This document shows, in pieces, positions 17,011 to 64,000 of a stretch of 64,000 bases of DNA. This stretch comes from Octopus bimaculoides (taxonomy: Eukaryota). Under the pieces are notes generated by a model, which ran no database searches, was not told where the DNA came from, and worked only from the letters and a program-made list of their open reading frames with translations. Position 1 is the stretch's first letter; each line of letters opens with the position of its first letter. The position numbers were made by a program, and so were the translations under genes. The stretch is from positions 7,959,007 through 8,023,006 of the forward strand of contig NC_069006.1 of the NCBI RefSeq assembly GCF_001194135.2. The letters run 5' to 3'.

Positions 17011-17505
17011 CATATATATAGGTATATACATATATGTACATATACACACACACTGCACAAATGTATACACATGTATATATTATATACACAAATTCATTTA
17101 ATATTCTTGAAATGAAATATGGGATAAAACACACACACATATAAGCCAGAAATAATAAATTTTGTGCTTATTGTTAATTACAGTCTAGGAATCTTTTAGT
17201 TGAAAGAACTAAAGAAAATAAAAAAACATCCTGAAATGGTCAAGCATTCAGGGCCAAATTAACTTCTGCACAATAAAGAACGGCACGGTTGGATATTATC
17301 TCTCAGATATAACTTGCTCCTGATTTTAATATTCCATTTCTGTGCTTTCCTTTTGCCCAACAATTTTTGGTAAGGTTTCTTTTTTTTGTGTAAACGAAAA
17401 TGGGGGGGTGGGGGTGGAATGGTTGAAACTAAAAAAAAAAAAAAAAAGCAAACAAACCCACAAAACAAAATAAACACAGAAACATGCCTGAATAATAAGA
17501 CTCAC

Positions 17506-20160
17506 CAATCCACTGTGACATGGCGCCTCGACTGAATGGCCTGAGTGGGAGGAATTTTCCGAAACTAACACAACCAGTGAAGAGTATGGTATACGGACTA
17601 ATTTCACGATTGGCTGCCTCACCCCTAGATATTTAACCAATGAGTCGGTTTTGCAATTAAATCGCCTCCACTGCTCGGTACCTTGTGATACCGAAGAGAG
17701 CTCAGAGTTGTAAGTAGGGAAAGCTCGAGAGCCAGTGCCATGAAACTCACTAAGGGCCAAAACACTACGATCTTCAATTCTAGGAGCAGGTATGGTCTCA
17801 ACAGGAGGCAGAACCGTCATGTCAGAGTCGTCCCTGTCACTTGTCTCAAACAGTGAGTCTCTGCTTAAATGACTCTTCAATACTCGACAATCCCAGGGTT
17901 TAAAATTTTTCGGCAGCTGTGCGTCATGGATCGAACTAGGTGTTAGACATGTCATTTCTGGCATAAAGTCCTGTAAATAACAATGCTGACTCCGGTAAAG
18001 AGTCTTATAACTCTTCTTTTGTTCTGTGGTCTGTAACTCTGCTAACTCCTTATGGAAGTCAAACAATATGCTGTCATAGTCAAAGGAAAAGCTGTCTTTG
18101 CTGTCATTGTATTGGGTTAAAAAAGGGTGTGTTAGTGGGGTAACAAAAGGTTTTCTCACCTTTGGAGAAAGCTTGTCATCATCCATCCTATCATCACCTT
18201 TTGTCGTCATCGTTGTTGCTGCTGTATCACAAGTAGGCAAATCATTTTGCAATGCGTTATCACTTTCAGAATTGACAGGCACATTCTCTCGAATAATGCG
18301 CATAGTGTAAATGGAATTATCAGCACCTTCTTTTCCAGCATTCAAGGATCTGGATGCTGGGTTTTCACTGTCAGAGCTGTATAGTCCTTTCTCACGAATA
18401 ATCTTTACTTTGGACGTGAAGGCACAACCACCTTGCCCACTTTTACCACAAGATTTATTGCTTGATTCTTTGGAAGCAAGATGGTGCTTGGCACCACCAG
18501 CTGCGTAATTAATTAGTAGATCCTCATCACTGTCTGAACTGCTCGACCGTTTTTGATTCTGAGAATATAACAGTTTGATTTGCGAAAGTTTCAGGTCATC
18601 AGATTCGAATTCTGAATGTGACGATGATGCTGAAGAAACTAATTGTTGTGGCTGTTCATCTTGAGAATCGGACAATTTTCTTCTTTTTCTTCTGATCGTT
18701 TTTCTATTAAGATCAGAACTGGAATCAGAATCAGAGTCTGAGTCTTTAAGTATTTCCTTTTTAGACAAAGAAATTTTGAATGGCTTCACCGTTTTCTGTG
18801 TTCTGTTATTATCACATGCTGTTGCTTGATTCTTGGACTGTCCACTTTTCAATGCTTGACCGGAAGACCATTTCATTCGTGAAGTATTCAACACTGGACT
18901 TTCGGGATCACTTTCCTCTATGTTCTCCACTTTGAATGGACTTTTGCTATCGGAATCACTGGTGATGATTTTCTTGGCTTTCTTTGACTTCACATTTCCC
19001 AGGGTACTGTTTATGATACGGTTCCGAAACAGACGAATTCTAATTGGACTGTTATTTGACTCAGATGAATCACTTACCTGTATTAGCTTCTTCAGCTTGG
19101 CTGGCGGTGTGAAAGCACTATCGGAACTAACATTACCTGACTCAAGGGATGCTTTGTAAGGGCGGCTACGAACTGGTGTGCCCATCTCCTTCATAACATT
19201 ATTCTTCTCCGCAGTCACTTCCTGGCTATCGCTGGAAAGTAATGAGAACGGTGTGTTCCTGATACGTGAAACATTTTTCACAACTGACTCATCCGTCTCT
19301 TGTTCTACATCCTCATCACTGTGCAAACTGGTGACAGCATCACTGCTGTCTTCAAAAACAGACTGAAGAACCTCAAATGCTGACAATCTCTTTGAATTTG
19401 GAACCATCACCAATTTTCCTGATTTATCTTCTGTACAAGGTTTCAGAGACGATGAGATTTGGCATTCTTTTTCCTCAGAGACCTTTAAATCATTTCTGTC
19501 ATCGTTACAAGACACGTCAGCATCAGCATCTGGGAGAACTATGCTGGTTTCTGCAACAATGAGAGATGATTTTTTCTTACCACTTTGTTGTACAGATGTC
19601 AATTCTTTCTGAGTTGGTTTGGCAATGACTCGAATGTTTCTTCGAGAATGACTCATGCCAATTGTCTTACTCATCATTTTTGAACTTCCATGCACAGCAT
19701 CCTGCAAATTCCCATCACTCCCACCACCACTAACATCATCTTCATCTTCTTTGACTGCATCAGTCTCCAGATCTACCTCATCTTTTACATCACCATAGTT
19801 ATCTTCACTGCTTTTGACATTATCAACACTTTTGGCATCACTCTCCAAACTGACATCATTTTTTCGGTCAGTTCCAATATTTTGATCATCCTTGGCACCA
19901 GCCTTACAATTAGCAGCATCACCATTAATCTCACAACTACCATCACCATCACAATCATCATCATCATCATCAACATCATCAACAGACCCTGCTTCTTTTG
20001 GCAACTCACTTCCATTTTGGGCACCACTGCCTGATTTTTCTCTGGCGCTATCTGATATCTCCATCGTGCTCGTGTTCTCTGGTAAGACTGTCGTTTCTGA
20101 TGCTTTTGATGATGTTGTGTCTTTCATCTCAGTGTTTCTGTCATCTTCATCTGCAGATTT
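17506..20160 (-). CDS. HIRIP3: HIRIP3-like coding exon 3: giant 885-codon Ser/Asp/Glu/Lys-rich, mostly disordered central region
   Basis: Lies inside the 946-aa ORF 17326-20166. Strong acceptor (polypyrimidine + TTGCAG|AAA) at 20161 and donor TTG|GTGAGT at 17505; 2655 nt, phase 0 to 0, compatible with both flanking exons. Confidence 0.85.
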
Positions 20161-20324
20161 CTGCAAGGGGAGAGAGTAAAGGAAAAAAAATAAAAGAAAA
20201 AGAAATCAACATATTGCTTTAATTAAATAAATTTATTTTCATTTATTACATTTTTTGTCTTTAAGACAAACATGATTGCATACAGCCACACACAAGCTAT
20301 ATATATACCCCAATCATGTGGGTG

Positions 20325-49319: not shown

Positions 49320-49998
49320 TCCACATGCTACAACAACAATAACAATCACAAGAACCACAACATTACAAACTTAACACGCCTTCGTTGCACAGGAGAGTTC
49401 CATAAGGGCCATAAAAGTTCCAAGGGAGATCACTCTAACGCGCTGGTTCTACTCCCACTCTCTCTGTTTCTTCACCTCCTCCTTCTCTCTGACACCGCTT
49501 TTCTTTATGAATTAACTTTGTATTATATTTAAATAAACTAATTTAATTCTAAGAGCTAAGCCTACATCATATACACACACATATATATATACTTATATAT
49601 ATAAGTATATATATATATGTATAGTGTCGGAACTTTTTTAATTATTATATATGCTTGTAAGATAGTTTTAACAAAGCCAGGCTAAACACATGAACTGAGC
49701 CAAAGAAAAAAACAAAAGAACCCTCTTTCACAAAACTGACCCCCGCCACCACCATCGATTGTCTCTGGCCTCCACCGTCAGTCCCTTAACTCTGGCCAGA
49801 GGGGCAGAGAAGGGAGAGAGGAAGAGAGATGACCAGCAACGAAGGAAGAGATAGAAACTTTAGGAATTATTTGTGATGTTTCTTATTTTCCCACACAGCG
49901 GAATAAGGTTTGTTTTCGAAGATGTTTATAAAATACAAATGAATTTGTTATTGTTTTTCTTTTCCAAATATTTACTGTATCGTGTAGACATCGCGCAC

Positions 49999-52248: not shown

Positions 52249-55200
52249 TTATTTCTTTGTGGTCCCTTCCGGGAACTTCTTAAATACAGAGGTCCCGACG
52301 CATCTACGTAACCCTAACCACTAACCCTAAAACTAATCCCAAACCTAACCCCCTACATTGCTACGTAGATGCATTGGGATCACTGTATAGTGCCCCCTAT
52401 CGTTAGTGGCATACAAGGTATACAAGTGTGCCCTGATGGCTTTGTTTCCGCATAAGCCCCCCCATCCAGAAATCGATATTTTCAAATGATGTTCTTTACA
52501 AATACATTTCAGATGGTTTAGATTCGGATTATATCGAAATTTGAAATGAAATTTTTTGGGGGGGGGGGAATTTTGAAAAATTCGCTGTGTCGGCTTTGTT
52601 TCCTCATAACCTCAGAAAAATAGGTATTTTTTTAAATGACACTTTCTACAAATACCTTTCAGAGTGTGTAGATTACAATTATATTGGAATTTAATATGGA
52701 AAACAAAATTGGTACACACGCACACATATTTACAAAATGAAATTCGAAATTTCGTTTGTTCACCATTTGTCGTTTTCATATTAAATTCCGCTATAATCGT
52801 AATTTAAATACTCTGAAAAGTATTTGTAGCAAGTTTCATTTAAAAATACACGTTTTCCCAAAAGTTATGAGAAAACAAAGCTGACTCGTGAATTTTCTGA
52901 AACTCCTCACCCCAACCTTGTTGAACACAATTTCTTATATAATTGGAGAATCTTCACCATCTGAAACGTATTTGCAGAAAATTTCATTAGCAAGACCTTA
53001 CTGTGTTGGCTTGACTATTTTTATTGGGGTGAGATTTCTCCCTGAAATGTCACCAAAGAAAATGTATTCACATGATATCCCCCACTCCCTGTAAACACTT
53101 ATTTTTCGCAATCTCTGTAATGTAGTTGTTTTCCTTTATTAAAAGTTGTTTTGTTTTGTTTTTTTTATCAATCCTAATTGTTCTGATTGAGATAGGAGAC
53201 TTGAAAAAGCTTGCTTAATGTTTTACTCTTTTATTGGTTTCCATTATATGACTGGCCATGCAGGAGCACCACCTTTAGTCGAACAAATCGACCCCAGGAC
53301 TTATTCTTTGTAAGCCTAGCACTTATTCTATTGGTCTCTTTTGCCAAACTGCTAAGTTACAGGGACATAAACACACCATTGGTTGTCAAGCTATGGTGGG
53401 AGGAACGACAACTGTAATACTGCAATAGTGGAAGAGATGTGATATTGCACTGGGCTAAAACACTACCTGGACCGTAAGTAAAGCATGTGTAAAATTTGAA
53501 TGAAATTGGTTGTGTAGTTCTGAAGTTTTAGGGATTCACAGACTCACAGACACACATTCTCACCTTTATTGGACGGACCGAGACCTTTGGAAATGGGCTG
53601 TGCGTGAGAAGACCCGGCAAGCCAAGTAAGATCGTTGCCAGTGCCCCTGGACTGGTTCTTGTGCGGGTGGCACATGAGATGCACCATTTTGAGCGTGGCC
53701 GTTGCCAGTACCGCCTGACTGGCTCCTGTAGGATTTTCGAGCGAGATCGTTGCCAGTGCCCCTGGACTGGCTTGTGCGGGTGGCACATAAAAGACACCAT
53801 TTCGAGCGTGGCCGTTTTCGTGCGGGTGACACGTAAAAGCACCCACTACACTCTCTNNNNNNNNNNNNNNNNNNNNNNNNNNNNNNNNNNNNNNNNNNNN
53901 NNNNNNNNNNNNNNNNNNNNNNNNNNNNNNNNNNNNNNNNNNNNNNNNNNNNNNNNNNNNNNNNNNNNNNNNNNNNNNNNNNNNNNNNNNNNNNNNNNNN
54001 NNNNNNNNNNNNNNNNNNNNNNNNNNNNNNNNNNNNNNNNNNNNNNNNNNNNNNNNNNNNNNNNNNNNNNNNNNNNNNNNNNNNNNNNNNNNNNNNNNNN
54101 NNNNNNNNNNNNNNNNNNNNNNNNNNNNNNNNNNNNNNNNNNNNNNNNNNNNNNNNNNNNNNNNNNNNNNNNNNNNNNNNNNNNNNNNNNNNNNNNNNNN
54201 NNNNNNNNNNNNNNNNNNNNNNNNNNNNNNNNNNNNNNNNNNNNNNNNNNNNNNNNNNNNNNNNNNNNNNNNNNNNNNNNNNNNNNNNNNNNNNNNNNNG
54301 CGAGTGAAATCGAAATCGAAAATTGAAACAAATTCGTTGACTGGCACCCATGCCAACCTTCCTTAATTGGACACTAAACTCAGCTTGCAAAGACCTGTTG
54401 GGGCAAGAGAGATCGAAACTGAACCAAATTCGATGGCTGGCACCCGTGCCAGCGGAGCGCTAACAGCACCATCCGAGCGGGATCACTGCCAGAGCAGCAA
54501 TCTCGTTTCTGTGCTGGTGGCACCTAAAAAGCACCATTTGAGCGCAATAGTTTCCAGCTTCGCCATACTGGCACTTGTACCGGTGGCATGTGAACAAAAC
54601 ATTGGACAGAATCGTGTGCAGGTGGCACATAAAAAACAAATAACCCTATTGAGCGTGGCTGTTGCCAGTATCGGTGGACTGGCCCTCATGCCAGTGGCAC
54701 GTAAAAAGCACCCACTACACTCTCGGAGTGGTTGGCGTAAGGAAGGGCATCCAGATCAGATTGGAGTCTGGTGTAACCATCTGGTTTGCTAGTCCCCAGT
54801 CAAATCGTTCAACCCATGCTAGCATGGAAAGCGGACGTTAAATGATGATGATCATGATATATATCATCATCATCATCATCGTTTAACGTCCGCTTTCCAT
54901 NNNNNNNNNNNNNNNNNNNNNNNNNNNNNNNNNNNNNNNNNNNNNNNNNNNNNNNNNNNNNNNNNNNNNNNNNNNNNNNNNNNNNNNNNNNNNNNNNNNN
55001 NNNNNNNNNNNNNNNNNNNNNNNNNNNNNNNNNNNNNNNNNNNNNNNNNNNNNNNNNNNNNNNNNNNNNNNNNNNNNNNNNNNNNNNNNNNNNNNNNNNN
55101 NNNNNNNNNNNNNNNNNNNNNNNNNNNNNNNNNNNNNNNNNNNNNNNNNNNNNNNNNNNNNNNNNNNNNNNNNNNNNNNNNNNNNNNNNNNNNNNNNNNN

Positions 55201-55900
55201 NNNNNNNNNNNNNNNNNNNNNNNNNNNNNNNNNNNNNNNNNNNNNNNNNNNNNNNNNNNNNNNNNNNNNNNNNNNNNNNNNNNNNNNNNNNNNNNNNNNN
55301 NNNNNNNNNNNNNNNNNNNNNNNNNNNNNNNNNNNNNNNNNNNNNNNNNNNNNNNNNNNNNNNNNNNNNNNNNNNNNNNNNNNNNNNNNNNNNNNNNNNN
55401 NNNNNNNNNNNNNNNNNNNNNNNNNNNNNNNNNNNNNNNNNNNNNNNNNNNNNNNNNNNNNNNNNNNNNNNNNNNNNNNNNNNNNNNNNNNNNNNNNNNN
55501 NNNNNNNNNNNNNNNNNNNNNNNNNNNNNNNNNNNNNNNNNNNNNNNNNNNNNNNNNNNNNNNNNNNNNNNNNNNNNNNNNNNNNNNNNNNNNNNNNNNN
55601 NNNNNNNNNNNNNNNNNNNNNNNNNNNNNNNNNNNNNNNNNNNNNNNNNNNNNNNNNNNNNNNNNNNNNNNNNNNNNNNNNNNNNNNNNNNNNNNNNNNN
55701 NNNNNNNNNNNNNNNNNNNNNNNNNNNNNNNNNNNNNNNNNNNNNNNNNNNNNNNNNNNNNNNNNNNNNNNNNNNNNNNNNNNNNNNNNNNNNNNNNNNN
55801 NNNNNNNNNNNNNNNNNNNNNNNNNNNNNNNNNNNNNNNNNNNNNNNNNNNNNNNNNNNNNNNNNNNNNNNNNNNNNNNNNNNNNNNNNNNNNNNNNNNN

Positions 55901-55934
<34 letters not shown>

Positions 55935-57431
55935 GTATACATAAATACATGTGTCGAAACCATAATGATATCTGTGGGGCAGCTGATGATGGAATTATGT
56001 TGGATTGTTGGTATGGCTATGGAATAGTATCATAACACATCCTTTTGATATATATATATATATATATGTGTGTGTATGTATGTATGTATTTGTGTGTCTG
56101 TGTTTGTCCCCACCACCATTGATGACAACCGATGTTTGTGTGTTTACATCCCTGTAACTTAACGGTTTAGCAAAAGAGACCAATAGAATAAGTACTAGAC
56201 TTACAAAGAATAAGTCCTGGGGCCGACTTGTTCAACTAAAGGTGGTGCTCCAGCATGGCTGCAGTCAAATTGCCGAAACAAGTAAAGGAATAAAAGAATG
56301 AAAGAATCTAGTTGACTTTTGCTCTACATCACATTCCTTGTGAAAATATCTAAAAAAGAACCAAAAGAAAAGATCCACTCTGTTGTATTATAAGATGTTT
56401 CCCCCCTACCCTGTCTTCTCTCTTGTTAATTATTTATTCATTTATTCATACATTGATGTATTAATTTATTAATTTATTCATACATTAATGTATTAATTTA
56501 TTCATGTGTTTCCCAATAATCTGTTCATGTTTTCTAAACTAGTTTCTTTTTCTTTTGCACTTTTGTTGTTTGAGGGTACAACGCCCCCTGGTGAGAATAG
56601 TCTAGACCACTACAAGTAAACAATAGCAGTGTAAGCAAGTAGTTCGTGCTAGCTCCACAGTTCGTGTATTGATAGTTCAAAGTTCAGAGTTTCAGTTAGC
56701 GTGTTGGATTGTTGGTTCTTAAGATTGTTGTTACATTGCATGTGGTTACTGCCATTTGTTTCGATTACATTGTTGTAGCCATCATCATCGTCGTCGTCAT
56801 TTAACGTCTGCTTTCCATGCTGGCATGGGTTGGACTGTTTGACTGAGGAGTGGCGAGCCAGAAGGCTGCATCAGGCTCCAATCTGATCTGACAGAGTTTC
56901 TACAGCTGGATGCCCTTCCTAGCGCCAACCACTCAGAGAGTGTAGTAGGTGCTTTTACGTGCCACTGGCACGAGGGCCAGTCAGGTGGNNNNNNNNNNCC
57001 CTTCCTAGCGCCAACCACTCGGAGAGTGTAGTAGGTGCTTTTACGTGCCACCGGCACGAGGGCCAGTCAGGTGGTTCCAGCAACGACCACACTCAAAAGG
57101 TGTTTTTTATGTGCCACCTATTTGGGAGCCAGTCCAGCGGCACTGGCAATGACCATGTTTGAATGTTGTTTTTCTCATGCCACTGGCACATGTGCCAGTA
57201 AGGTGACGCTGGCAACGATCACGCTTGAATGGTGCTTTTTACATGCCACCGGCACAGAAGCCAATCAGCAGCCCTGGCAACAATGACACTCGGATGGTGA
57301 TTTTAACGTTCCACTGGCACAAGTGCCAGTCAGGCGGTACTGTCATCAGCCATGTCAGTGATTTTGATTTCACTTGCCTCAACAGGTCTTCACAAGCAAA
57401 GTTTATTTGTTTATCCATTAGGATCTAACGT

Positions 57432-57740
57432 GGAAGTGCAATGGTCCAGTGGTTAGGGCAGCGGACTCGTGGTCGGAAGATCGCGGTTTTGATTCCCAGA
57501 CCGGGCGTTGTGTGTGTTGATTGAGTGAAAACACCTAAAAACTTCACGAGGCTCCGGCAGGGGGTGATGGTGACCCCTGTTGTATTCTTTCACCCTAACT
57601 TTCTCTCACTCTTTCTTCCTGTTTCTTGAGTAACGCTGCGATGGACTGGCATCCCGTCCAGCTGGTAGGAATACCTACGCCATAGAAACCGAGAAACTGG
57701 ACCCATGACACTGGCTAGGCTTTAAAAGGGTGCATAATAA
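57432..57740 (+). mobile_element. tRNA-derived SINE family D with a Meta-domain-like tail
   Basis: Head GTGCAATGGTCCAGTGGTTAGGGCAGCGGACTC...TTCCCAGACCGG; tail GCGATGGACTGGCATCCCGTCCAG. Confidence 0.75.
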
Positions 57741-58109
57741 TTAGGATCTAACAACTTCTTAAGGCAATTACAAAATATCTCCATCACCACCACCTCCTTT
57801 AATCATTAGTAACCGACAATAAGACAACACTTTGTTTATCAACCTGTAAGAAAAAGCAGCCAAAATCTTCCTGGATTAAAAAAAAAAAAAAGACGAAGAC
57901 AATGGATTAAACTGGTTTAAGATACCCTTTCTGAAAAAATGGTGAGAGCACCTTTAATTATAGATCTGCTCTGTTGGAATTAACTACCAATGAATCAGGT
58001 TACAACAATGATTTTCTAGAATATTTGATTCCAACCCTTTCCAGATTACTTGCATTTTAAATTAATCAAATTTAATTAAATGTTCCTGCAATAACTAAAT
58101 GAAATAGGA

Positions 58110-58570
58110 ATACCTGCTGGTGCCACGTAAAAAGCACAGATGCTGGTGCTGCGTAGAAATTGCTGCTGCCACGTAAAAAGTGCTGGTGCCATGTAAAAAG
58201 TGCTGGTGTCGCATAAAAGGTGCTGGGACCATGTAAAAAAGTGCTGGTGCCACGTAAGAAGTACTGCGGCCACATAAAATGTGCTGGTGCCACATAAAAA
58301 AACACAGCTTATGGTGCCACGTAAAAAAACACTGACGCTGGTGCCATCTAAAAAGCAGTGGTGTTGGTGCCACGTAAAACCCACTGGTGCTGGCATCCTG
58401 TAAAAAGCACTGAGTACATGCTGTGTAGTGGTTGGTGTTAGGAAGGGCATCCAGCTGTAAAAACCATACCAAGTAGACACTGGAACCTGGTGCAGCTCCC
58501 AGCCTTGCCAGCTCTTGTTACACTGTCCAACCCATGCCAGCATGGAAAATAGGCATTAAGTAATGATGAT
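58110..58570 (+). repeat. RTE 3' UTR with an expanded ~20-22-bp minisatellite (TGCTGGTGCCACGTAAAAAG-like, ~12 units)
   Basis: Tandem units at 58120-58400, followed by GGAAGGGCATCCAGCTGT...CATGGAAA...TAATGATGATG. Confidence 0.75.
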
Positions 58571-59800
58571 GATACCAGTATATTAATACTGGACTGTGCA
58601 ATTTATCAGTAGACTAATTTGGTGGCCACAGGAATTTGAAGTTCCTGCTTGTAAATTAATGCAGATTATAAAAGATTCCAGACCACCACTGTTGGACCAG
58701 TAGCAGTAGTAGTAGTAATAGTAGTGGACAGCTAAGTGTGTATTTAGTCATCACCTAATGTAACATCCTCTTACTTGGTTAAAGAAGTCCTATGATTTTG
58801 CTGGTTGGCCATGTTCTTGTGAATGACAAGGATGATTCTTTTGTCAAAGAGTACTTAAATGAAGATGCAGAGTTTGTGCATAGCACCTTGGGCAAGCATC
58901 TTCTACAGCCAATGCTGTGTGAGTGAATTTGGTAAACGGAAACTGTGTGGAAGCCTATGTGCGTATATCAAAGCAGAAGACTGGAAAAATTTGCTATTAT
59001 TTCTAATCCCCATTACAGATGTTTCATTACCTAACTGGAGTTACAAAGGAATACATGTAGTAAAATATCTCCTATTAGTTATTCTTCAGACAGAGAATTT
59101 AAATAATACATGTATGTATCGACAGCCAACGTTGGTTTGTTTACATCCTGTAACTTAGCACGTTGGGTCAGGAAACCTATAGAATAGGTGCCAGATTTTA
59201 AGAATTTCCTGGGATTGACCTGTTCAACTAAAACCTTTCAGGGTGATGCCCCAGTATGGCCACAGTCCAATGACTGAAACCAGTTAGAAGTTCAAAGATA
59301 CGAACATCTTTTACTACAAAAAAAGAAATCTAAGTTCAGGTGACCTCAGCCATAAACTAAATTAATCCAATACTAAATACAGCACAGGTATAAAATATAT
59401 TGGCTCAGGTGTCAAACAACTTGGTTCATGTTTGATGTATGTCTGCAAATATTTATTTTAATAACAAGGTGTAAGACAGGATTGTGAGAGCATCAGAGAA
59501 AAATGTCTCTCGTGACATTTGTTCCAGCTCTTTACATTCTGAGTTCAAACCCTGCTGAGGTTAACTTTGCCGTTCATGCATTCATGGGTTTGATAAAATA
59601 AAGTACCAGGGGTCAATTGTATTCACTAATCCACTTCCTTCAAAATTTTTGGTCTTATGACTGGACCAAGCTTCCCAACTGCGTGGTTCTGGGTTCAGTC
59701 CCACTGCATGGAACCTTAGGCGAGTGTCTTCTACTATAGCCTCGAACTAACCAAAGACTTGTGAGTGGATTTGGTTGACAGAAACTGAAAGAAGCCCGTC

Positions 59801-59850
<50 letters not shown>

Positions 59851-61397
59851 TTCTCCCCTACCATCGCTTGGCAACCGATGTTGGTGTGTTTACGTCCCTG
59901 TAACTTAGCAGTTCAGCAAAAGAGACCAATAGAATAAGTACTAGGCTTACAAAGAATAAGTCCTGGGCTGATATGTTTGACTAAAGATGGTGCTCCAGCA
60001 TGGCCACAGTCAGCTGAAACAAGTAAAAAATTAAAGAATATGTATATATCATCATCATCATCATTTAATGTCCATGTTCCATGCTGGCATGGGTGGGATG
60101 GTACCACAAGAGCTGGTCAGGCACAAGCCGGCACCAAACTTCTGTGACTGTTAAATGATGATGGTGTTTATTAATATTTAGTGGAAGCACCAAAGTGACT
60201 CAAGGTCTGAGAGTTCCATGCAAAGTGCCAACACACAAAACTCTTGCGGGTTCTAGCGACATTTGCCACAAACGTTTTTGCCGCAGGAAAACTCACTTTG
60301 TATATTCTTTTATTTGTTAGTCATAAGATTACGGCCATGCTGGAGCACCGCCTTTAGTCAAACAAATGAACCCGACAGTTTATTCTTTGTAAGCCTAGTA
60401 CTTATTCTGCCAGTCTCTTTTGCCGAACTGCTAAGTTACAAGGACTAAGTAAAGAAGATAATTGAAAAATCCTTCAAAAGGTAAATATAAGGGTATTTGC
60501 ATAAAAGATTGCATAATAAATAGCATTTATCATATATTTCTTTATTGCCCACAAGGGGCTAAACATAGAGGGGCCAAACAAGGACAGACAAAGAAAGGGA
60601 TTAAGTCGATTACATCAACCCCAGTGTGTAACTGGTACTTTATTTATCGACCCCGAAAGGATGAAAGGCAAAGTCGACCTCGGTGGAATTTGAACTCAGA
60701 ACGTAACAGCAGACAAAATATCGCTAAGCATTTCGCCCGGTTCACTAACGTTTCTGCTAGCTCGCCGCCTTTCATATAATAAATAGCATTTATTATAATA
60801 AAACTTATTTGCTGTTCATCATAATTATTAGTTCTTAATGTGGACGCCATCTTGGACTTTGGCTACCATTTTCGATTTTCACATTGGCAATCATGTCTAT
60901 CTTCAAGAACATGTTTTAAACTATAGGTCTGCTAGACTGCGTATTTGTATCACCTTTTGAAGGATTCTTACAATATTTGACATTCATCCTATTCACTAAT
61001 ATATATATATATATGTGTGTGTGTATATATATATATGTGTATGTTTGTATGTGTGTGTGTGTATTTATACATATGTGTGTATGTGTGTGTGTATATATAT
61101 TTATACATATGTGTGCATGTATATTTATACATGTCTATGCATGTATATATATATGTGTATGTGTGTGTATATATNNNNNNNNNNATATATATATATGTGT
61201 GTGTGTATATATATATATGTGTATGTTTGTATGTGTGTGTGTGTATTTATACATATGTGTGTATGTGTGTGTGTATATATATTTATACATATGTGTGCAT
61301 GTATATTTATACATGTCTATGCATGTATATATATATGTGTATGTGTGTGTATATATATATTTATACATATGTGTATGCATGTATATATGTGTGTGTG

Positions 61398-61428
<31 letters not shown>

Positions 61429-61516
61429 ACTTCCTGCATTGTCTGCATACTGATAACTTCTCTTTTGTTTCTTTTTTCTCTTTTTCCCATTTTACTTCCA
61501 GGAATTCTTTGGAGCC

Positions 61517-63073
61517 ATGAATCTGAGTAACTTAAGACCACAATGCATCACAGAATACCTGCAAGTTGGGGACAACTTAGCTGTCCAGCTTCAGGTCCAT
61601 CCTATCACTGCCCCTGCATCGAAAGAGCCTGGTCTACCAGAGTATTGGTTCTCTGATCGCCATCTTCAGGAAGTTCTACAATTAATTAAAAAGCCTCTCT
61701 TTGACTGGATGCAAGGAAGCAGGGAAGATGAAAAACAGAAGAAAAACCATGAACCCAAAATCTTAACTGGTAATACAATAAGACTGGTTTATACGTTTAA
61801 GAAAAACCCTACAAGACAGTATTTTCTAATAATGAACTTAGACTCTGGTGCTAAAAGCCACATTAATAACCGTTTCCAAAATCTTTGTTTAAAAAGTGAA
61901 AAAATTGTTGTCTTTGTCTGTCGTAAAGAAAAAGGTTTTTCACCTTTGCTGACAGCTGTGTCCAACTCTGCCAATAAGACTTCAGAAACTTCCCAAACGT
62001 TAACAATTAGTGACTATTTCAGCAGCTGTGACAATAGTGAGGAACAATCGGGGTCCGTTTCTACTCAGTCGGGTGATGATAAGGTAACCAAAAGAGAAAA
62101 ACTGAAGAATATAGTGAGTCGAGAGAAACGGTTGCGTAGTCGGAAGAGAAACACTCAAGATTTAGTTGCTAAAAGTAAAGTGCCCGAAGTTCCTGAAGAC
62201 CAAGATTCTTTAAAATCGCCCAAAAAATCGGGTGAAAATAAGAACAAAGTTTCGAATACAGATGAAAATTCAAAGTCATGGAGAAGCCCCAAATCCTGTA
62301 AAAATGCCAAATTGGTAAGTGAAAAGAGCTCGAATGATGATTTGGTCAACAAAAAAATTATAAATAAACGTAACTGCATCAAAGAATTAGACAGTGATGG
62401 TAGCACGTCGTCGTGTGAGAACTTACCGTATTATGGTTTCTCAAAATCCAGTAATTCCGAAGACCTTTATATCTCCAGTTCCTTTGAGCAAGACTTGGAT
62501 TTCGAATCCTCATACGGTGGTTCGCCAGTGAAGAGTCCTTCGAAATTAAGCAGCATTGGTAATATCAGTGCCTCTACTGATACCACTCTGAACCAATCGG
62601 ACATGAATAAGAACGAAACGAAGACTAAAGAAAATTGTGAGAAAATGAAACTTCAAGGACTTAAAGACTCATATTCTTTGAAATCTGTTTTATGTTCTGA
62701 AGAAAATTCTGACACAGATTCGGTAAATATCAATGTGTTGAACTTAACTCCAAACCAGATTCTATTGTTAGTAAAAGACAGTAAACAGTATTTACGTAAT
62801 ATCTTCCAAGGGAAAGGAATAAGTTGGCGACATAAAATGTACAAAAACGGTGGAACTGACCGTCTACAACTAAATTATTTATGTTTTTGGGGCTGTCTGT
62901 CAAGCAGCCAGTTGGACAGTATCATGGAAGGTTTGTTCAAAATGTTCTGTAAACGACACATGAAGTATGCTGATTACGTGTCGAAAGTGCTGCTGGCCGA
63001 AATGATAACCAAGATCTACATGGACACTTGTCATCTCACTCACGAAGAGGCTGAGAGATTGCTTCAGAAATAA
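61517..63073 (+). CDS. SLX4IP: SLX4-interacting protein homolog (UPF0492 family), 518 aa, single coding exon, with an extra C-terminal helical domain
   Basis: Long non-repetitive ORF. Motifs WFSDRHLQEV, SEKIVVFVC, ISDYFSSC and REKLKNIVSR correspond to human WFSEQKKEEV, PDRFVVCVS, VSDYFAEC and RNALKEIVKR (recalled). A strong acceptor (long pyrimidine tract + CCAG) at 61500-61501 precedes GGAGCCATG, so the first exon(s) are non-coding. Confidence 0.82.
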   Translation: MNLSNLRPQCITEYLQVGDNLAVQLQVHPITAPASKEPGLPEYWFSDRHLQEVLQLIKKPLFDWMQGSREDEKQKKNHEPKILTGNTIRLVYTFKKNPTRQYFLIMNLDSGAKSHINNRFQNLCLKSEKIVVFVCRKEKGFSPLLTAVSNSANKTSETSQTLTISDYFSSCDNSEEQSGSVSTQSGDDKVTKREKLKNIVSREKRLRSRKRNTQDLVAKSKVPEVPEDQDSLKSPKKSGENKNKVSNTDENSKSWRSPKSCKNAKLVSEKSSNDDLVNKKIINKRNCIKELDSDGSTSSCENLPYYGFSKSSNSEDLYISSSFEQDLDFESSYGGSPVKSPSKLSSIGNISASTDTTLNQSDMNKNETKTKENCEKMKLQGLKDSYSLKSVLCSEENSDTDSVNINVLNLTPNQILLLVKDSKQYLRNIFQGKGISWRHKMYKNGGTDRLQLNYLCFWGCLSSSQLDSIMEGLFKMFCKRHMKYADYVSKVLLAEMITKIYMDTCHLTHEEAERLLQK

Positions 63074-63482
63074 GAATGAAGTAACAGCAACAACAACAAC
63101 AACACAGGCCTGTAACAATGATTGTCTTTGAGTTACCGTTTCCACAAGTGGGGTGACAACAGTTGGCTAAAAAAGAAAAAAAGAAAAGAATTGTTAGATT
63201 ATTTGCCCCACGCTAATTACAGGTATCTCAATGCAACTCAGTAATGCATACTTGAACAAGTCATTTAACTCTACTCTTTCCATAAAATTCTATTTTGATT
63301 CTGATAGTTTTCGTATTTTTTTGTGTTTTTTTCTCTCTCTCTCTCTTTTTTTTTTGATTTTTTTTTTTTAATTATGTATTTTGTTGGTAAAATCAGTAGA
63401 GCAACAACCAGTGTGCCTTGCAGTATCTAATCATGTTCCTTTGTTTTCAGAGTTCAAATCCTTGATGGAGAGACGCTTCAAT

Positions 63483-63517
<35 letters not shown>

Positions 63518-63557
63518 GAGAGAGGGAACCAAAGAAAGAGCTCAGTGAGGGTTTGGT

Positions 63558-63592
<35 letters not shown>

Positions 63593-63698
63593 AGATGTGA
63601 TTTACTAGAGAGAGAGGGAGGGATGTCTTTACTGAAGTAGAGAGTGAGAGAGGAACTGCAAGAGACTGTTAGCTTGTGTGTAAGAATGGTGCGGTGGA

Positions 63699-64000
63699 GG
63701 CGCAATGGCCCAGTGGTTAGGGTAGCGGACTCGCGGTCATAGGATCGCGGTTTCGATTCCCAGACCGGACGCTGTGAGTGTTTATTGAGCGAAAGCACCT
63801 AAAAGCTCCACGAGGCTCCGGCAGGGGTTGGGTGGTGAACCCTGCTGTACTCTTTCACCACAACTTTCTCTCACTCTTACTTCCTGTTTCTGTTGTGCCT
63901 ATAATTCAAAAGGGCCAGTCTTGTCACGCTGAATATCCCCGAGAACTACGTTAAGGGTACACGTGTCTGTGGAGTGCTCAGCCACTTGCACGTTAATTTC
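63699..64000 (+). mobile_element. tRNA-derived SINE family D, truncated by the window end
   Basis: Head GGCGCAATGGCCCAGTGGTTAGGG...GTTTCGATTCCCAG. The body matches 42845-43460, 24130-24430(-) and 2500-2830(-). Confidence 0.8.

What the first reader, a model, noticed from the sequence alone, without database searches (positions are those of the whole stretch)
62744..63070. SLX4IP homolog carries a C-terminal domain resembling the PWWP3A/MUM1 (EXPAND1) C-terminus
Seen: after a long disordered Ser/Lys/Asp linker, the ORF ends in ~110 aa of ordered, helical-looking sequence (SKQYLRNIFQGKGISWRH...SSSQLDSIMEGLFKMF...DYVSKVLLAEMITKIYMDTCHLTHEEAERLLQK). Recalled: human SLX4IP has no such domain, while human PWWP3A ends with AESHLRAILKSRKPSRWL...EGQLDLVVKYLQGVY...[32 protein letters not shown], showing the same three blocks in the same order. 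Inference: one protein joins an SLX4/XPF-binding telomere and crosslink-repair module to a module from a 53BP1-associated chromatin protein. This is either a lineage-specific fusion or an ancestral architecture lost in vertebrates. It is the best candidate for something undescribed in this window.
Basis: partly seen in the sequence, partly recalled or inferred. Interest (0 to 1): 0.75.

Follow-up and report, generated by a model that had tools for sequence, protein, structure and literature searches.

The report
Ancestral two-domain SLX4IP in octopus
The octopus version of the DNA-repair adaptor SLX4IP ends in a folded helical domain that humans have lost from SLX4IP but keep at the end of the chromatin protein PWWP3A, and this two-domain form runs from corals to amphioxus, labelled "uncharacterized" or "hypothetical" wherever a source names it.

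Summary
Window 61517..63073 (+) is one uninterrupted 518-aa ORF with three parts.

- **N-domain (aa ~5-219): SLX4IP.** A profile of 25 orthologues hits human SLX4IP (PDB 9qed_C) at E=7.7e-17. The AlphaFold model's best PDB match is 9qed_C (E=7.6e-6, TM 0.69).
- **Linker (~173 aa):** Ser/Lys-rich.
- **C-domain (aa ~405-518):** a confidently modelled seven-helix domain (pLDDT 85.8).

The C-domain is homologous to the PWWP3A/B C-terminal domain (Pfam PF20886), but only at profile level.
- hhalign of 35 SLX4IP-type C-domains against mammalian PWWP3A/B gives 89.5% probability, E=2e-6 and score 44.4. Shuffled controls score 11.4±3.3.
- Relatives P0006 and P0081 pass Pfam's own cut-off.
- The octopus sequence alone gets only a sub-threshold RTC4 hit.

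The N+C architecture occurs in cnidarians, molluscs, echinoderms and amphioxus. Human SLX4IP lacks the domain. It is therefore an ancestral architecture lost on the vertebrate line, not a lineage-specific fusion.

Every named orthologue is "uncharacterized" or "hypothetical". No paper found links the two families. The public O. vulgaris model splices away most of the domain.

The function of the C-domain is unknown. The likeliest role is a docking module that targets XPF-ERCC1.

This is a new variant of a known kind, of moderate interest.

The parts
49326..49416 (+). Candidate 5' non-coding exon. It corresponds to the N-terminal extension of the public O. vulgaris model.
   Evidence: tblastn of P0001 finds LQT*HAFVAQESS at 49363-49401. 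The ATG at 49326 is followed by an in-frame TAA after five codons, so the extension is not coding here. The boundaries are inferred and the evidence is weak.
61470..61501 (+). Polypyrimidine tract and AG splice acceptor just upstream of the coding exon.
   Evidence: Read directly from the sequence...ttttctctttttcccattttacttccAG|GAATTC. The O. vulgaris model joins an upstream exon here (EFLGAM against EFFGAM).
61517..63073 (+). Complete coding sequence of the octopus SLX4IP orthologue. It is 518 aa in one exon, with a TAA stop at 63071-63073.
   Evidence: ORF list and sequence. It is 93% identical to O. vulgaris P0001 over aa 40-512 of that model.
61529..62173 (+). SLX4IP N-terminal alpha/beta domain plus a following long helix (aa 5-219). 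It is the predicted XPF-binding module.
   Evidence: HMM envelope aa 5-219. An orthologue profile hits human SLX4IP 9qed_C at E=7.7e-17. The AF2 model has pLDDT 78.2, and its top Foldseek hit is 9qed_C at E=7.6e-6 with TM 0.69. W44/F45, V131/V132 and K96 match human W32/F33, V115/V116 and K91.
62174..62692 (+). Low-complexity Ser/Lys/Asn/Asp/Glu-rich linker (aa 220-392).
   Evidence: Composition is 36 Ser and 25 Lys of 173 residues. Linker length varies between orthologues, from about 20 to more than 1300 aa. Conservation is low. The DSDGSTSSCENLPYYGF motif is shared only with P0002.
62693..63067 (+). C-terminal seven-helix domain (aa 393-517; helices aa ~412-517). It belongs to the PWP3A-B_C / RTC4-like superfamily.
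   Evidence: HMM envelope. AF2 pLDDT 85.8. hhalign against PWWP3A/B gives 89.5%, E=2e-6. Relatives hit PF20886 at or above the cut-off. There is a sub-cut-off RTC4 hit at aa 483-517. There is no PDB match by fold or by sequence.
62930..62936 (+). Internal GT donor (G|GTTTGT) used by the public O. vulgaris gene model. Its use removes the last ~46 residues of the domain.
   Evidence: P0001 diverges after ...SIME. The read-through sequence is conserved in P0002 and P0003 and across phyla, so read-through is the conserved coding form.

Best explanation
The ORF is the octopus orthologue of SLX4IP in its ancestral two-domain form.

**Shown**
- The N-terminal alpha/beta domain is homologous in sequence and fold to the human SLX4IP domain, which binds the helicase-like (RecA2) module of the XPF nuclease.
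- The C-terminal ~115 aa form an all-helical domain homologous to the C-terminal domain of vertebrate PWWP3A/B (Pfam PF20886). It is weakly similar to the fungal RTC4-like domain.
- The same N-linker-C arrangement occurs in cnidarians, molluscs, echinoderms and amphioxus.
- Human SLX4IP lacks the C-domain.
- The C-domain is the most conserved part of the protein.

**Inferred**
- The N-domain clamps XPF-ERCC1, as it does in human.
- The disordered linker acts as a flexible tether.
- The C-domain is a docking module that binds a partner protein or a chromatin or telomere feature. It would thereby direct or regulate XPF-ERCC1 (with SLX4) at particular lesions.
- On the vertebrate line SLX4IP lost this module, and a copy survives attached to the PWWP chromatin reader of PWWP3A/B.
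For: **N-domain**
- Profile against the human SLX4IP chain: E=7.7e-17.
- Patiria orthologue against human: E=7.3e-10.
- PF15744 is passed by P0053 (68.6 bits), P0064 (38.6 bits) and P0058 (27.8 bits). All three also carry the C-domain.
- The top Foldseek hit is 9qed_C.
- Mutation-sensitive residues are conserved or partly conserved (PMC12804970).

**C-domain**
- The octopus protein finds copepod-type P0004 at E=4.5e-5 in 5.8e9 sequences.
- hhalign of the N+C set against the copepod clade gives 99.7%. Against mammalian PWWP3A/B it gives 89.5%, E=2e-6, about 10 sd above shuffles.
- PF20886 scores 28.0 bits on P0006 and 28.9 bits on P0081, against a cut-off of 27.
- 12 of 25 N+C proteins hit PF20886 and 10 of 25 hit RTC4, all below the cut-off.

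**Architecture**
- 49 sequences have both domains, always with N first and C last.
- Taxa are named and 72/76.
- One continuous ORF here excludes a gene-model fusion.

**Human lacks the domain:**; PMC12804970; PMC6863466.

**Domain company elsewhere points to chromatin:** PWWP in vertebrates and MBD in a tick.
Against: - The octopus protein itself hits neither PF15744 nor PF20886. Alone against the PWWP3A profile it is not significant. Membership therefore rests on profiles and intermediates.
- The R92 salt-bridge residue is Asn in octopus, and L16/V17 correspond to Gln/Leu. XPF binding is plausible but unproven.
- No function is known for the C-domain in any family.
- No solved structure resembles it.
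- No partner was tested.
- The public O. vulgaris model predicts an isoform that lacks most of the domain.
- The point of loss on the vertebrate line was not mapped. Tunicates, lampreys and fishes were not examined.
Confidence: 0.65

Rival explanations
1. The C-domain is best filed as a member of a broader RTC4-like superfamily. Its likeness to PWWP3A is only one branch of that family. There is then no special evolutionary or functional tie between SLX4IP and PWWP3A.
For: The only Pfam hit of the octopus sequence itself is RTC4, at E=0.0025. RTC4 hits recur in 15 of 21, 10 of 25 and 7 of 61 family members, mostly on profile positions ~74-112. Patiria P0053 scores 21.3 bits on RTC4 and does not hit PF20886.
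Against: All RTC4 hits are below the cut-off of 23.7 bits, and most cover only the last two helices. PF20886 matches cover nearly the whole domain (profile 25-136 of 141) and reach the cut-off in two relatives. The direct hhalign to mammalian PWWP3A/B spans 102 columns.
Confidence: 0.2
2. The main octopus transcript splices out of the domain at 62930|62931, as in the O. vulgaris model. The functional protein would then lack an intact C-domain, and the read-through ORF would be a minor or non-functional form.
For: P0001 (NCBI, O. vulgaris) ends ...SIMEE + 33 unrelated residues. A GT donor sits at exactly that point.
Against: The sequence after the putative donor is highly conserved. In that stretch, FCK.H.KY.DY..KVLL.E..IK..MD is shared with P0002 and P0003 and recurs in the consensus of orthologues that include bivalves, sea stars and cnidarians. 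The reading frame stays open to a stop at the conserved domain end. The same O. vulgaris model also has an N-extension that is not coding here, which suggests an automatic mis-model.
Confidence: 0.1
3. The resemblance to PWWP3A is chance or compositional similarity between two helical segments. The C-domain would then be an unrelated, invertebrate-specific SLX4IP domain.
For: The single-sequence comparison is not significant (probability 0.5%). Identity is only about 22%. The copepod-clade profile against the narrow mammalian PWWP3A alignment is weak (probability 3.3%).
Against: The hhalign score of 44.4 compares with 11.4±3.3 (maximum 17.7) for 100 column shuffles and 11.2 for the reversed alignment. 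The curated Pfam model, built independently, hits 7 of 21, 12 of 25 and 16 of 61 members, two of them at or above its cut-off. The blocks fall in the same order, and the domain sits at the extreme C-terminus in both families.
Confidence: 0.05

Closest known systems
Human SLX4IP (C20orf94; Pfam PF15744/UPF0492; PDB 9qed/9qee chain C)
   Same: The N-terminal alpha/beta domain is homologous in sequence (E=7.7e-17) and fold. W32/F33, V115/V116, K91 and the SDYF motif are conserved. The domain is followed by a basic helix (K.KLK.IV.R) and then a disordered region.
   Different: Human SLX4IP has 408 aa and a disordered C-terminal half with no folded domain (PMC12804970). The octopus protein adds a conserved seven-helix C-domain. 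Octopus has Asn at the position of the XPF-contacting R92. The octopus protein is too divergent to hit PF15744.
Vertebrate PWWP3A/PWWP3B (MUM1/EXPAND1, MUM1L1), C-terminal domain Pfam PF20886 (PWP3A-B_C)
   Same: The domain is homologous over about 100 columns. It shows the same three conserved blocks (hLR.I; QLD; VLLPE.I...AEE) and the same position at the extreme C-terminus.
   Different: PWWP3A/B carry a PWWP chromatin reader upstream, and the octopus protein has none. The RH and FCK.H.KY motifs of the SLX4IP-type domain are not kept in PWWP3A. PWWP3A has an intron after VLLPE, whereas octopus has none.
Fungal Rtc4 (restriction of telomere capping 4), RTC4-like domain Pfam PF14474
   Same: There are recurrent sub-threshold matches to profile positions ~74-112, which correspond to the last helices (YV.KVLL.E..IK.YMD).
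   Different: No match reaches the cut-off, and most cover only about a third of the model. No RTC4 sequence could be fetched for a direct comparison.
Arthropod C-domain proteins (copepod clade such as Tigriopus Tk09307; termite LOC110830764; tick MBD-containing protein)
   Same: The C-domain is clearly homologous (hhalign 99.7%) and is also at the extreme C-terminus.
   Different: Most have no detectable SLX4IP N-domain. They carry a Lys/Glu-rich region and a coiled-coil-like stretch, or an MBD, instead. P0072 is the exception and keeps an N-domain.
MAJIN N-terminal domain (PDB 6gnx, 6gny, 6j08)
   Same: The octopus SLX4IP N-domain model has fold-level similarity to it (Foldseek E about 1e-3, TM up to 0.65).
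   Different: Sequence identity is 9-12%, and no sequence-level relationship was tested. MAJIN is a meiotic telomere-nuclear envelope protein that binds TERB2, not XPF.

Membership tests
SLX4IP (Pfam PF15744 / UPF0492) | Match to the curated Pfam model at or above its cut-off (27 bits) | tested here: not met
   The octopus protein has no PF15744 hit even at E<=10. Orthologues with the same architecture do pass: P0053 68.6 bits, P0064 38.6 bits and P0058 27.8 bits.
SLX4IP (Pfam PF15744 / UPF0492) | Significant sequence relationship to experimentally characterised human SLX4IP | tested here: met
   A profile of 25 orthologues including the window protein hits 9qed_C at E=7.7e-17 over the N-domain. 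The cephalopod-centred profile finds the Pfam-positive Patiria protein at E=2e-54.
SLX4IP (Pfam PF15744 / UPF0492) | Fold of the XPF-binding N-terminal domain | tested here: met
   The AF2 model m55f41982e71f has 9qed_C as its best PDB match, at E=7.6e-6, probability 1.00 and TM 0.69 on the target.
SLX4IP (Pfam PF15744 / UPF0492) | Residues whose mutation breaks XPF/SLX4 binding in human (L16/V17, W32/F33, K91/R92, V115/V116) | tested here: inconclusive
   W44/F45, V131/V132 and K96 are conserved. R92 corresponds to N97, and L16/V17 correspond to Q24/L25. The residue roles come from PMC12804970.
SLX4IP (Pfam PF15744 / UPF0492) | Physical binding to XPF-ERCC1 / SLX4 | not testable with these tools
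   This needs pull-down or complex modelling. No multimer prediction was available.
PWP3A-B_C domain (Pfam PF20886) | Match to the curated Pfam model at or above its cut-off (27 bits) | tested here: not met
   The octopus sequence gets no hit. Relatives P0006 (28.0 bits) and P0081 (28.9 bits) pass. 12 of 25 N+C orthologues hit below the cut-off, the best at 18.9 bits.
PWP3A-B_C domain (Pfam PF20886) | Profile-profile homology to bona fide vertebrate PWWP3A/B C-termini over most of the domain | tested here: met
   hhalign gives 89.5%, E=2e-6, 102 columns and score 44.4. Shuffles give 11.4±3.3. The targets P0233-P0242 all carry precomputed PF20886.
PWP3A-B_C domain (Pfam PF20886) | Same three-dimensional fold as the PWWP3A C-terminal domain | not testable with these tools
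   No solved structure of the domain exists in the PDB copy, and no AlphaFold DB library was on hand. The octopus model is a seven-helix bundle.
PWWP3 protein family (PWWP3A/B as whole proteins) | MUM1-type PWWP domain upstream of the C-terminal domain | tested here: not met
   No PWWP hit appears in the octopus protein or in any of 25 N+C or 61 C-only relatives. The octopus protein shares a domain with PWWP3 but is not a PWWP3 protein.
RTC4-like domain (Pfam PF14474) | Match to the curated Pfam model at or above its cut-off (23.7 bits) over most of its 121 positions | tested here: inconclusive
   The octopus sequence scores 18.4 bits at E=0.0025, on profile positions 75-110 only. The best relative scores 21.3 bits. 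The hits recur but never reach the cut-off.

The most novel reading that the evidence does not exclude
The PWP3A-B_C / RTC4-like helical domain is the ancestral effector end of SLX4IP. It tethers XPF-ERCC1 (with SLX4) to a conserved chromatin or telomere partner. Vertebrates split this one protein's two jobs between SLX4IP (XPF clamp) and PWWP3A/B (chromatin reader plus the old effector domain). On this reading, human PWWP3A/B and SLX4IP still act on a common partner or pathway, and the PWWP3A C-terminus has an unrecognised role in XPF/SLX4-dependent repair or telomere recombination.
Probability: 0.2. Interest if true: 0.7.

Novelty: new variant of a known kind. Interest (0 to 1): 0.5.

Why it matters
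**For SLX4IP.** It is studied only in vertebrates. [quoted passage not shown] The ancestral protein ended in a folded domain that is better conserved than the XPF-binding domain. This implies an original function that vertebrate work cannot see. It also offers tractable invertebrate systems (sea star, Nematostella-like cnidarians, amphioxus, molluscs) in which to find it.

**For PWWP3A/B and RTC4.** The finding gives the orphan PF20886 domain of PWWP3A/B, and possibly RTC4, a concrete pathway context. That context is XPF-ERCC1/SLX4 crosslink repair and telomere recombination. The hypothesis can be tested with pull-downs.

**For annotation.** It allows dozens of "uncharacterized" or "hypothetical" invertebrate proteins to be named. 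It also flags a probable mis-model in the public O. vulgaris annotation.

Tried and rejected
- **Direct Pfam scan.** Scans of the octopus protein and of its C-domain gave only a sub-threshold RTC4 hit.
- **phmmer against PDB.** The octopus protein found nothing.
- **Foldseek of the C-domain model against PDB.** No match better than E=2.2, and all TM values were below 0.33. The fold has no solved relative.
- **C-domain profile against PDB sequences.** Nothing at E<=10.
- **Single-sequence hhalign to PWWP3A.** Not significant.
- **Concatenated N+C rows for the representative search.** I solved this by mixing full-length and partial rows.
- **Conserved linker motif.** DSDGSTSSCENLPYYGF looked like a possible phospho-SIM, but it is shared only with P0002. 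I dropped it.
- **Other domain partners of the C-domain.** No PWWP domain appears anywhere in the invertebrate set. I saw only single cases of MBD and UCH, and two weak PADR1_N hits. I followed up the MBD case only.
- **Origin of the vertebrate PWWP3A C-domain.** hhalign and Pfam scores point in different directions. This is unresolved.
- **Huen et al. 2010 (EXPAND1 domain mapping).** The paper is not held.
- **PWWP3A 2025 paper.** It says nothing about the C-terminal domain.
- **Exact-sequence look-ups.** The window protein and P0070 are not on record.
- **tRNA/SINE check at 63690-63770.** ARAGORN and Rfam found nothing meaningful.
Full report
**What is in the sequence**

Window 61517..63073 (+) is one uninterrupted ORF of 518 aa.
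- It starts five codons after a polypyrimidine tract and an AG acceptor at 61500-61501. The whole coding sequence therefore sits in one exon downstream of at least one non-coding exon.
- Its closest database relative is an Octopus vulgaris "hypothetical predicted protein" (P0001), 93% identical. The window therefore comes from a different Octopus species.
- The exact protein is not on record in the collection.

- An HMM built from orthologues places the C-terminal domain at aa 393-517.
- AlphaFold2, given 21 aligned sequences, models aa 393-518 with mean pLDDT 85.8 and pTM 0.80. The model has seven helices covering aa ~412-517.
- The preceding 173 residues are low-complexity: 36 Ser, 25 Lys and 16 Asn.
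- The C-domain is the most conserved part of the protein. Identity to P0002 is 62%, against 53% for the N-domain and 35% for the linker. Identity to P0003 is 38%, against 21% and 25%.

**The N-terminal part is SLX4IP**

The octopus protein itself does not hit Pfam PF15744. Its family does.
- A profile search of 1.84 billion representatives returned 655 proteins at E<=1e-3.
- Among the listed ones, the Patiria miniata protein P0053 passes PF15744 at 68.6 bits, Asterias P0064 at 38.6 bits and Amphiura P0058 at 27.8 bits. The cut-off is 27 bits.
- P0053 aligns to the solved human SLX4IP chain 9qed_C at E=7.3e-10.
- A profile of 25 orthologues that includes the window protein hits the same chain at E=7.7e-17.
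- The AlphaFold2 model of octopus aa 1-220 has pLDDT 78.2. Its best PDB match is 9qed_C, with E=7.6e-6, probability 1.00 and TM 0.69 on the target.

The cryo-EM paper behind 9qed (PMC12804970) lists residues whose mutation breaks the XPF interaction. Their octopus counterparts are in the table.

| Human residues | Octopus counterpart | Status |
|---|---|---|
| W32/F33 | W44/F45 | kept |
| V115/V116 | V131/V132 | kept |
| K91 | K96 | kept |
| R92 | N97 | changed (Arg in many other orthologues) |
| L16/V17 | Q24/L25 | changed |

That paper shows that the human N-domain binds the RecA2 part of the XPF helicase-like module. It makes no direct SLX4 contact in the solved complex. The C-terminal half of human SLX4IP is disordered.

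**The C-terminal part is a PWP3A-B_C-type domain**

On its own the octopus domain gets only a sub-threshold hit to the RTC4-like domain PF14474. That hit is E=0.0025 and 18.4 bits against a cut-off of 23.7, on profile positions 75-110. The link to PWWP3A comes from three independent routes.

1. *A chain of intermediates.*
   - The full octopus protein finds P0004, a 648-aa protein that shares only the C-domain, at E=4.5e-5 in 5.8 billion sequences.
   - P0004's relatives P0006 and P0081 pass Pfam's own PF20886 cut-off, at 28.0 and 28.9 bits against 27. The matches cover profile positions ~25-136 of 141.
2. *Recurrent sub-threshold hits.*
   - PF20886 is hit by 7 of 21, 12 of 25 and 16 of 61 family members.
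3. *A direct profile comparison.*
All 15 hits carry precomputed PF20886, and the recalled blocks occur verbatim in P0236 and P0243.
   - I compared them by hhalign with the 35 C-domains that come from proteins also carrying an SLX4IP N-domain. The result was probability 89.5%, E=2e-6, score 44.4 and 102 aligned columns.
   - One hundred column-shuffled controls gave 11.4±3.3 with a maximum of 17.7. The reversed alignment gave 11.2.
- The octopus sequence alone is not significant.

No solved structure resembles the domain, by fold or by sequence.

**The architecture is ancestral**

The N-domain is always at the start and the C-domain always at the extreme end. Linkers range from about 20 to more than 1300 aa. 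A more permissive search adds three more such proteins.

| Group | Sources named |
|---|---|
| Bivalves | Mya, Solemya, Dreissena, Potamilus, Sinanodonta, Mizuhopecten |
| Gastropods | Haliotis, Gigantopelta |
| Sea stars | Patiria, Asterias |
| Sea urchin | Lytechinus |
| Brittle star | Amphiura |
| Scyphozoan | Sanderia |
| Octocoral | Dendronephthya gigantea |
| Amphioxus | Branchiostoma lanceolatum |

- Human SLX4IP lacks the domain. The C-domain profile finds nothing in the full 408-aa chain. The family profile aligns only the N-domain and linker. The literature describes no folded C-terminal domain (PMC12804970, PMC6863466).
- In the octopus the two domains lie in one exon, so a gene-model fusion artefact is excluded.
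- The MUM1-type PWWP domain has no cnidarian or choanoflagellate homologue (PMC3457860). The helical domain was therefore probably part of SLX4IP before PWWP3A existed.

**Other carriers of the domain**

- A large clade of C-only proteins comes mainly from marine metatranscriptomes and includes a Tigriopus copepod protein. A termite protein lies on a separate branch.
- Most show no SLX4IP N-domain. One member of the large clade, P0072, keeps one at E=7e-20. These proteins may therefore be derived SLX4IP orthologues.
- A tick (Ornithodoros turicata) gene model joins a methyl-CpG-binding domain to the C-domain.
- The domain is thus found with PWWP in vertebrates, with MBD in a tick and with an XPF-binding module elsewhere. 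This company points to chromatin and DNA repair.

**How it most likely works**

- Shown: the homology of both domains, the conserved order, and strong constraint on the C-domain.
- Inferred: the N-domain clamps XPF-ERCC1 as in human. The linker is a flexible tether. The C-domain is a docking module for a partner or a chromatin or telomere feature, and it directs or regulates the nuclease.
- I give the identity and evolutionary claims about 0.9 confidence and the docking mechanism about 0.4.
- The domain is mildly basic, with net charge +6 over 113 aa. Direct nucleic-acid binding is therefore not excluded.

**Is it already known?**

- Every named orthologue is "uncharacterized" or "hypothetical".
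- P0001-P0004 have no precomputed Pfam domains.
- Under Pfam cut-offs, none of the 38 N+C proteins I scanned would receive both domains.
- Only one paper in the held library contains both SLX4IP and MUM1, and it is a transcriptomic study of stroke. No listed paper links SLX4IP with RTC4, PWWP3A or EXPAND1.
- I rate this a new variant of a known kind: two known modules in an undescribed, ancient combination.

**Annotation caveat**

The public O. vulgaris model leaves the domain at a GT donor that corresponds to window 62930|62931 and appends 33 unrelated residues. It also adds an N-terminal extension whose counterpart here (49326-49416) has an in-frame stop. The read-through sequence is conserved across phyla. 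The model is therefore probably wrong or describes a minor isoform. Transcript data are needed to decide.

Noticed in passing
window 62930-62936 and 49326-49416: The public O. vulgaris model (P0001) splices out of the C-domain at G|GTTTGT. It also adds an N-terminal extension that is interrupted by an in-frame TAA in this window. It is likely an automatic mis-model or a minor isoform.
   Followed up: partly
window 60977-61430: A TG/TA-rich microsatellite block contains an assembly gap (N run at 61175-61184). The gap is flanked by two nearly identical ~170-bp copies, immediately upstream of the coding exon. This may be an assembly artefact.
   Followed up: no
window 61517-62176 (model m55f41982e71f): After human SLX4IP, the next-best fold matches of the octopus SLX4IP N-domain are MAJIN chains from the meiotic telomere complex MAJIN-TERB2 (6gnx, 6gny, 6j08). 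Foldseek E is about 1e-3 and TM reaches 0.65. This may be a distant fold relationship between two telomere-associated proteins.
   Followed up: no
window 17326-20166 (-): A 946-aa open reading frame rich in Ser/Asp/Glu/Lys has no Pfam hit. It is probably a large disordered coding exon of a neighbouring gene on the opposite strand.
   Followed up: partly
P0168 (locus L005, Ornithodoros turicata GCA_037126465.1): A tick gene model joins an N-terminal methyl-CpG-binding domain (PF01429, E=2.4e-12) to the same C-terminal helical domain. It could be a real architecture or a fused model.
   Followed up: partly
P0072 (430 aa, marine metatranscriptome): One member of the otherwise C-only, copepod-like clade retains an SLX4IP N-domain (E=7e-20). 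This hints that the arthropod C-only proteins are derived SLX4IP orthologues.
   Followed up: partly
window 63690-63770: A tRNA-like stretch (…GGCCCAGTGGTTAGGG…GGTTTCGATTCCCAGACCGG…) looks like the head of a tRNA-derived SINE. ARAGORN finds no tRNA in 55000-64000. Rfam, run on 63300-64000, gives only a chance-level SCARNA7 hit at 63385-63532.
   Followed up: partly
window 62393-62446 (aa ~293-310): An acidic/Ser-rich motif followed by hydrophobic residues (DSDGSTSSCENLPYYGF) is shared only with P0002, the closest non-Octopus relative. It resembles a phospho-regulated SUMO-interaction motif.
   Followed up: partly
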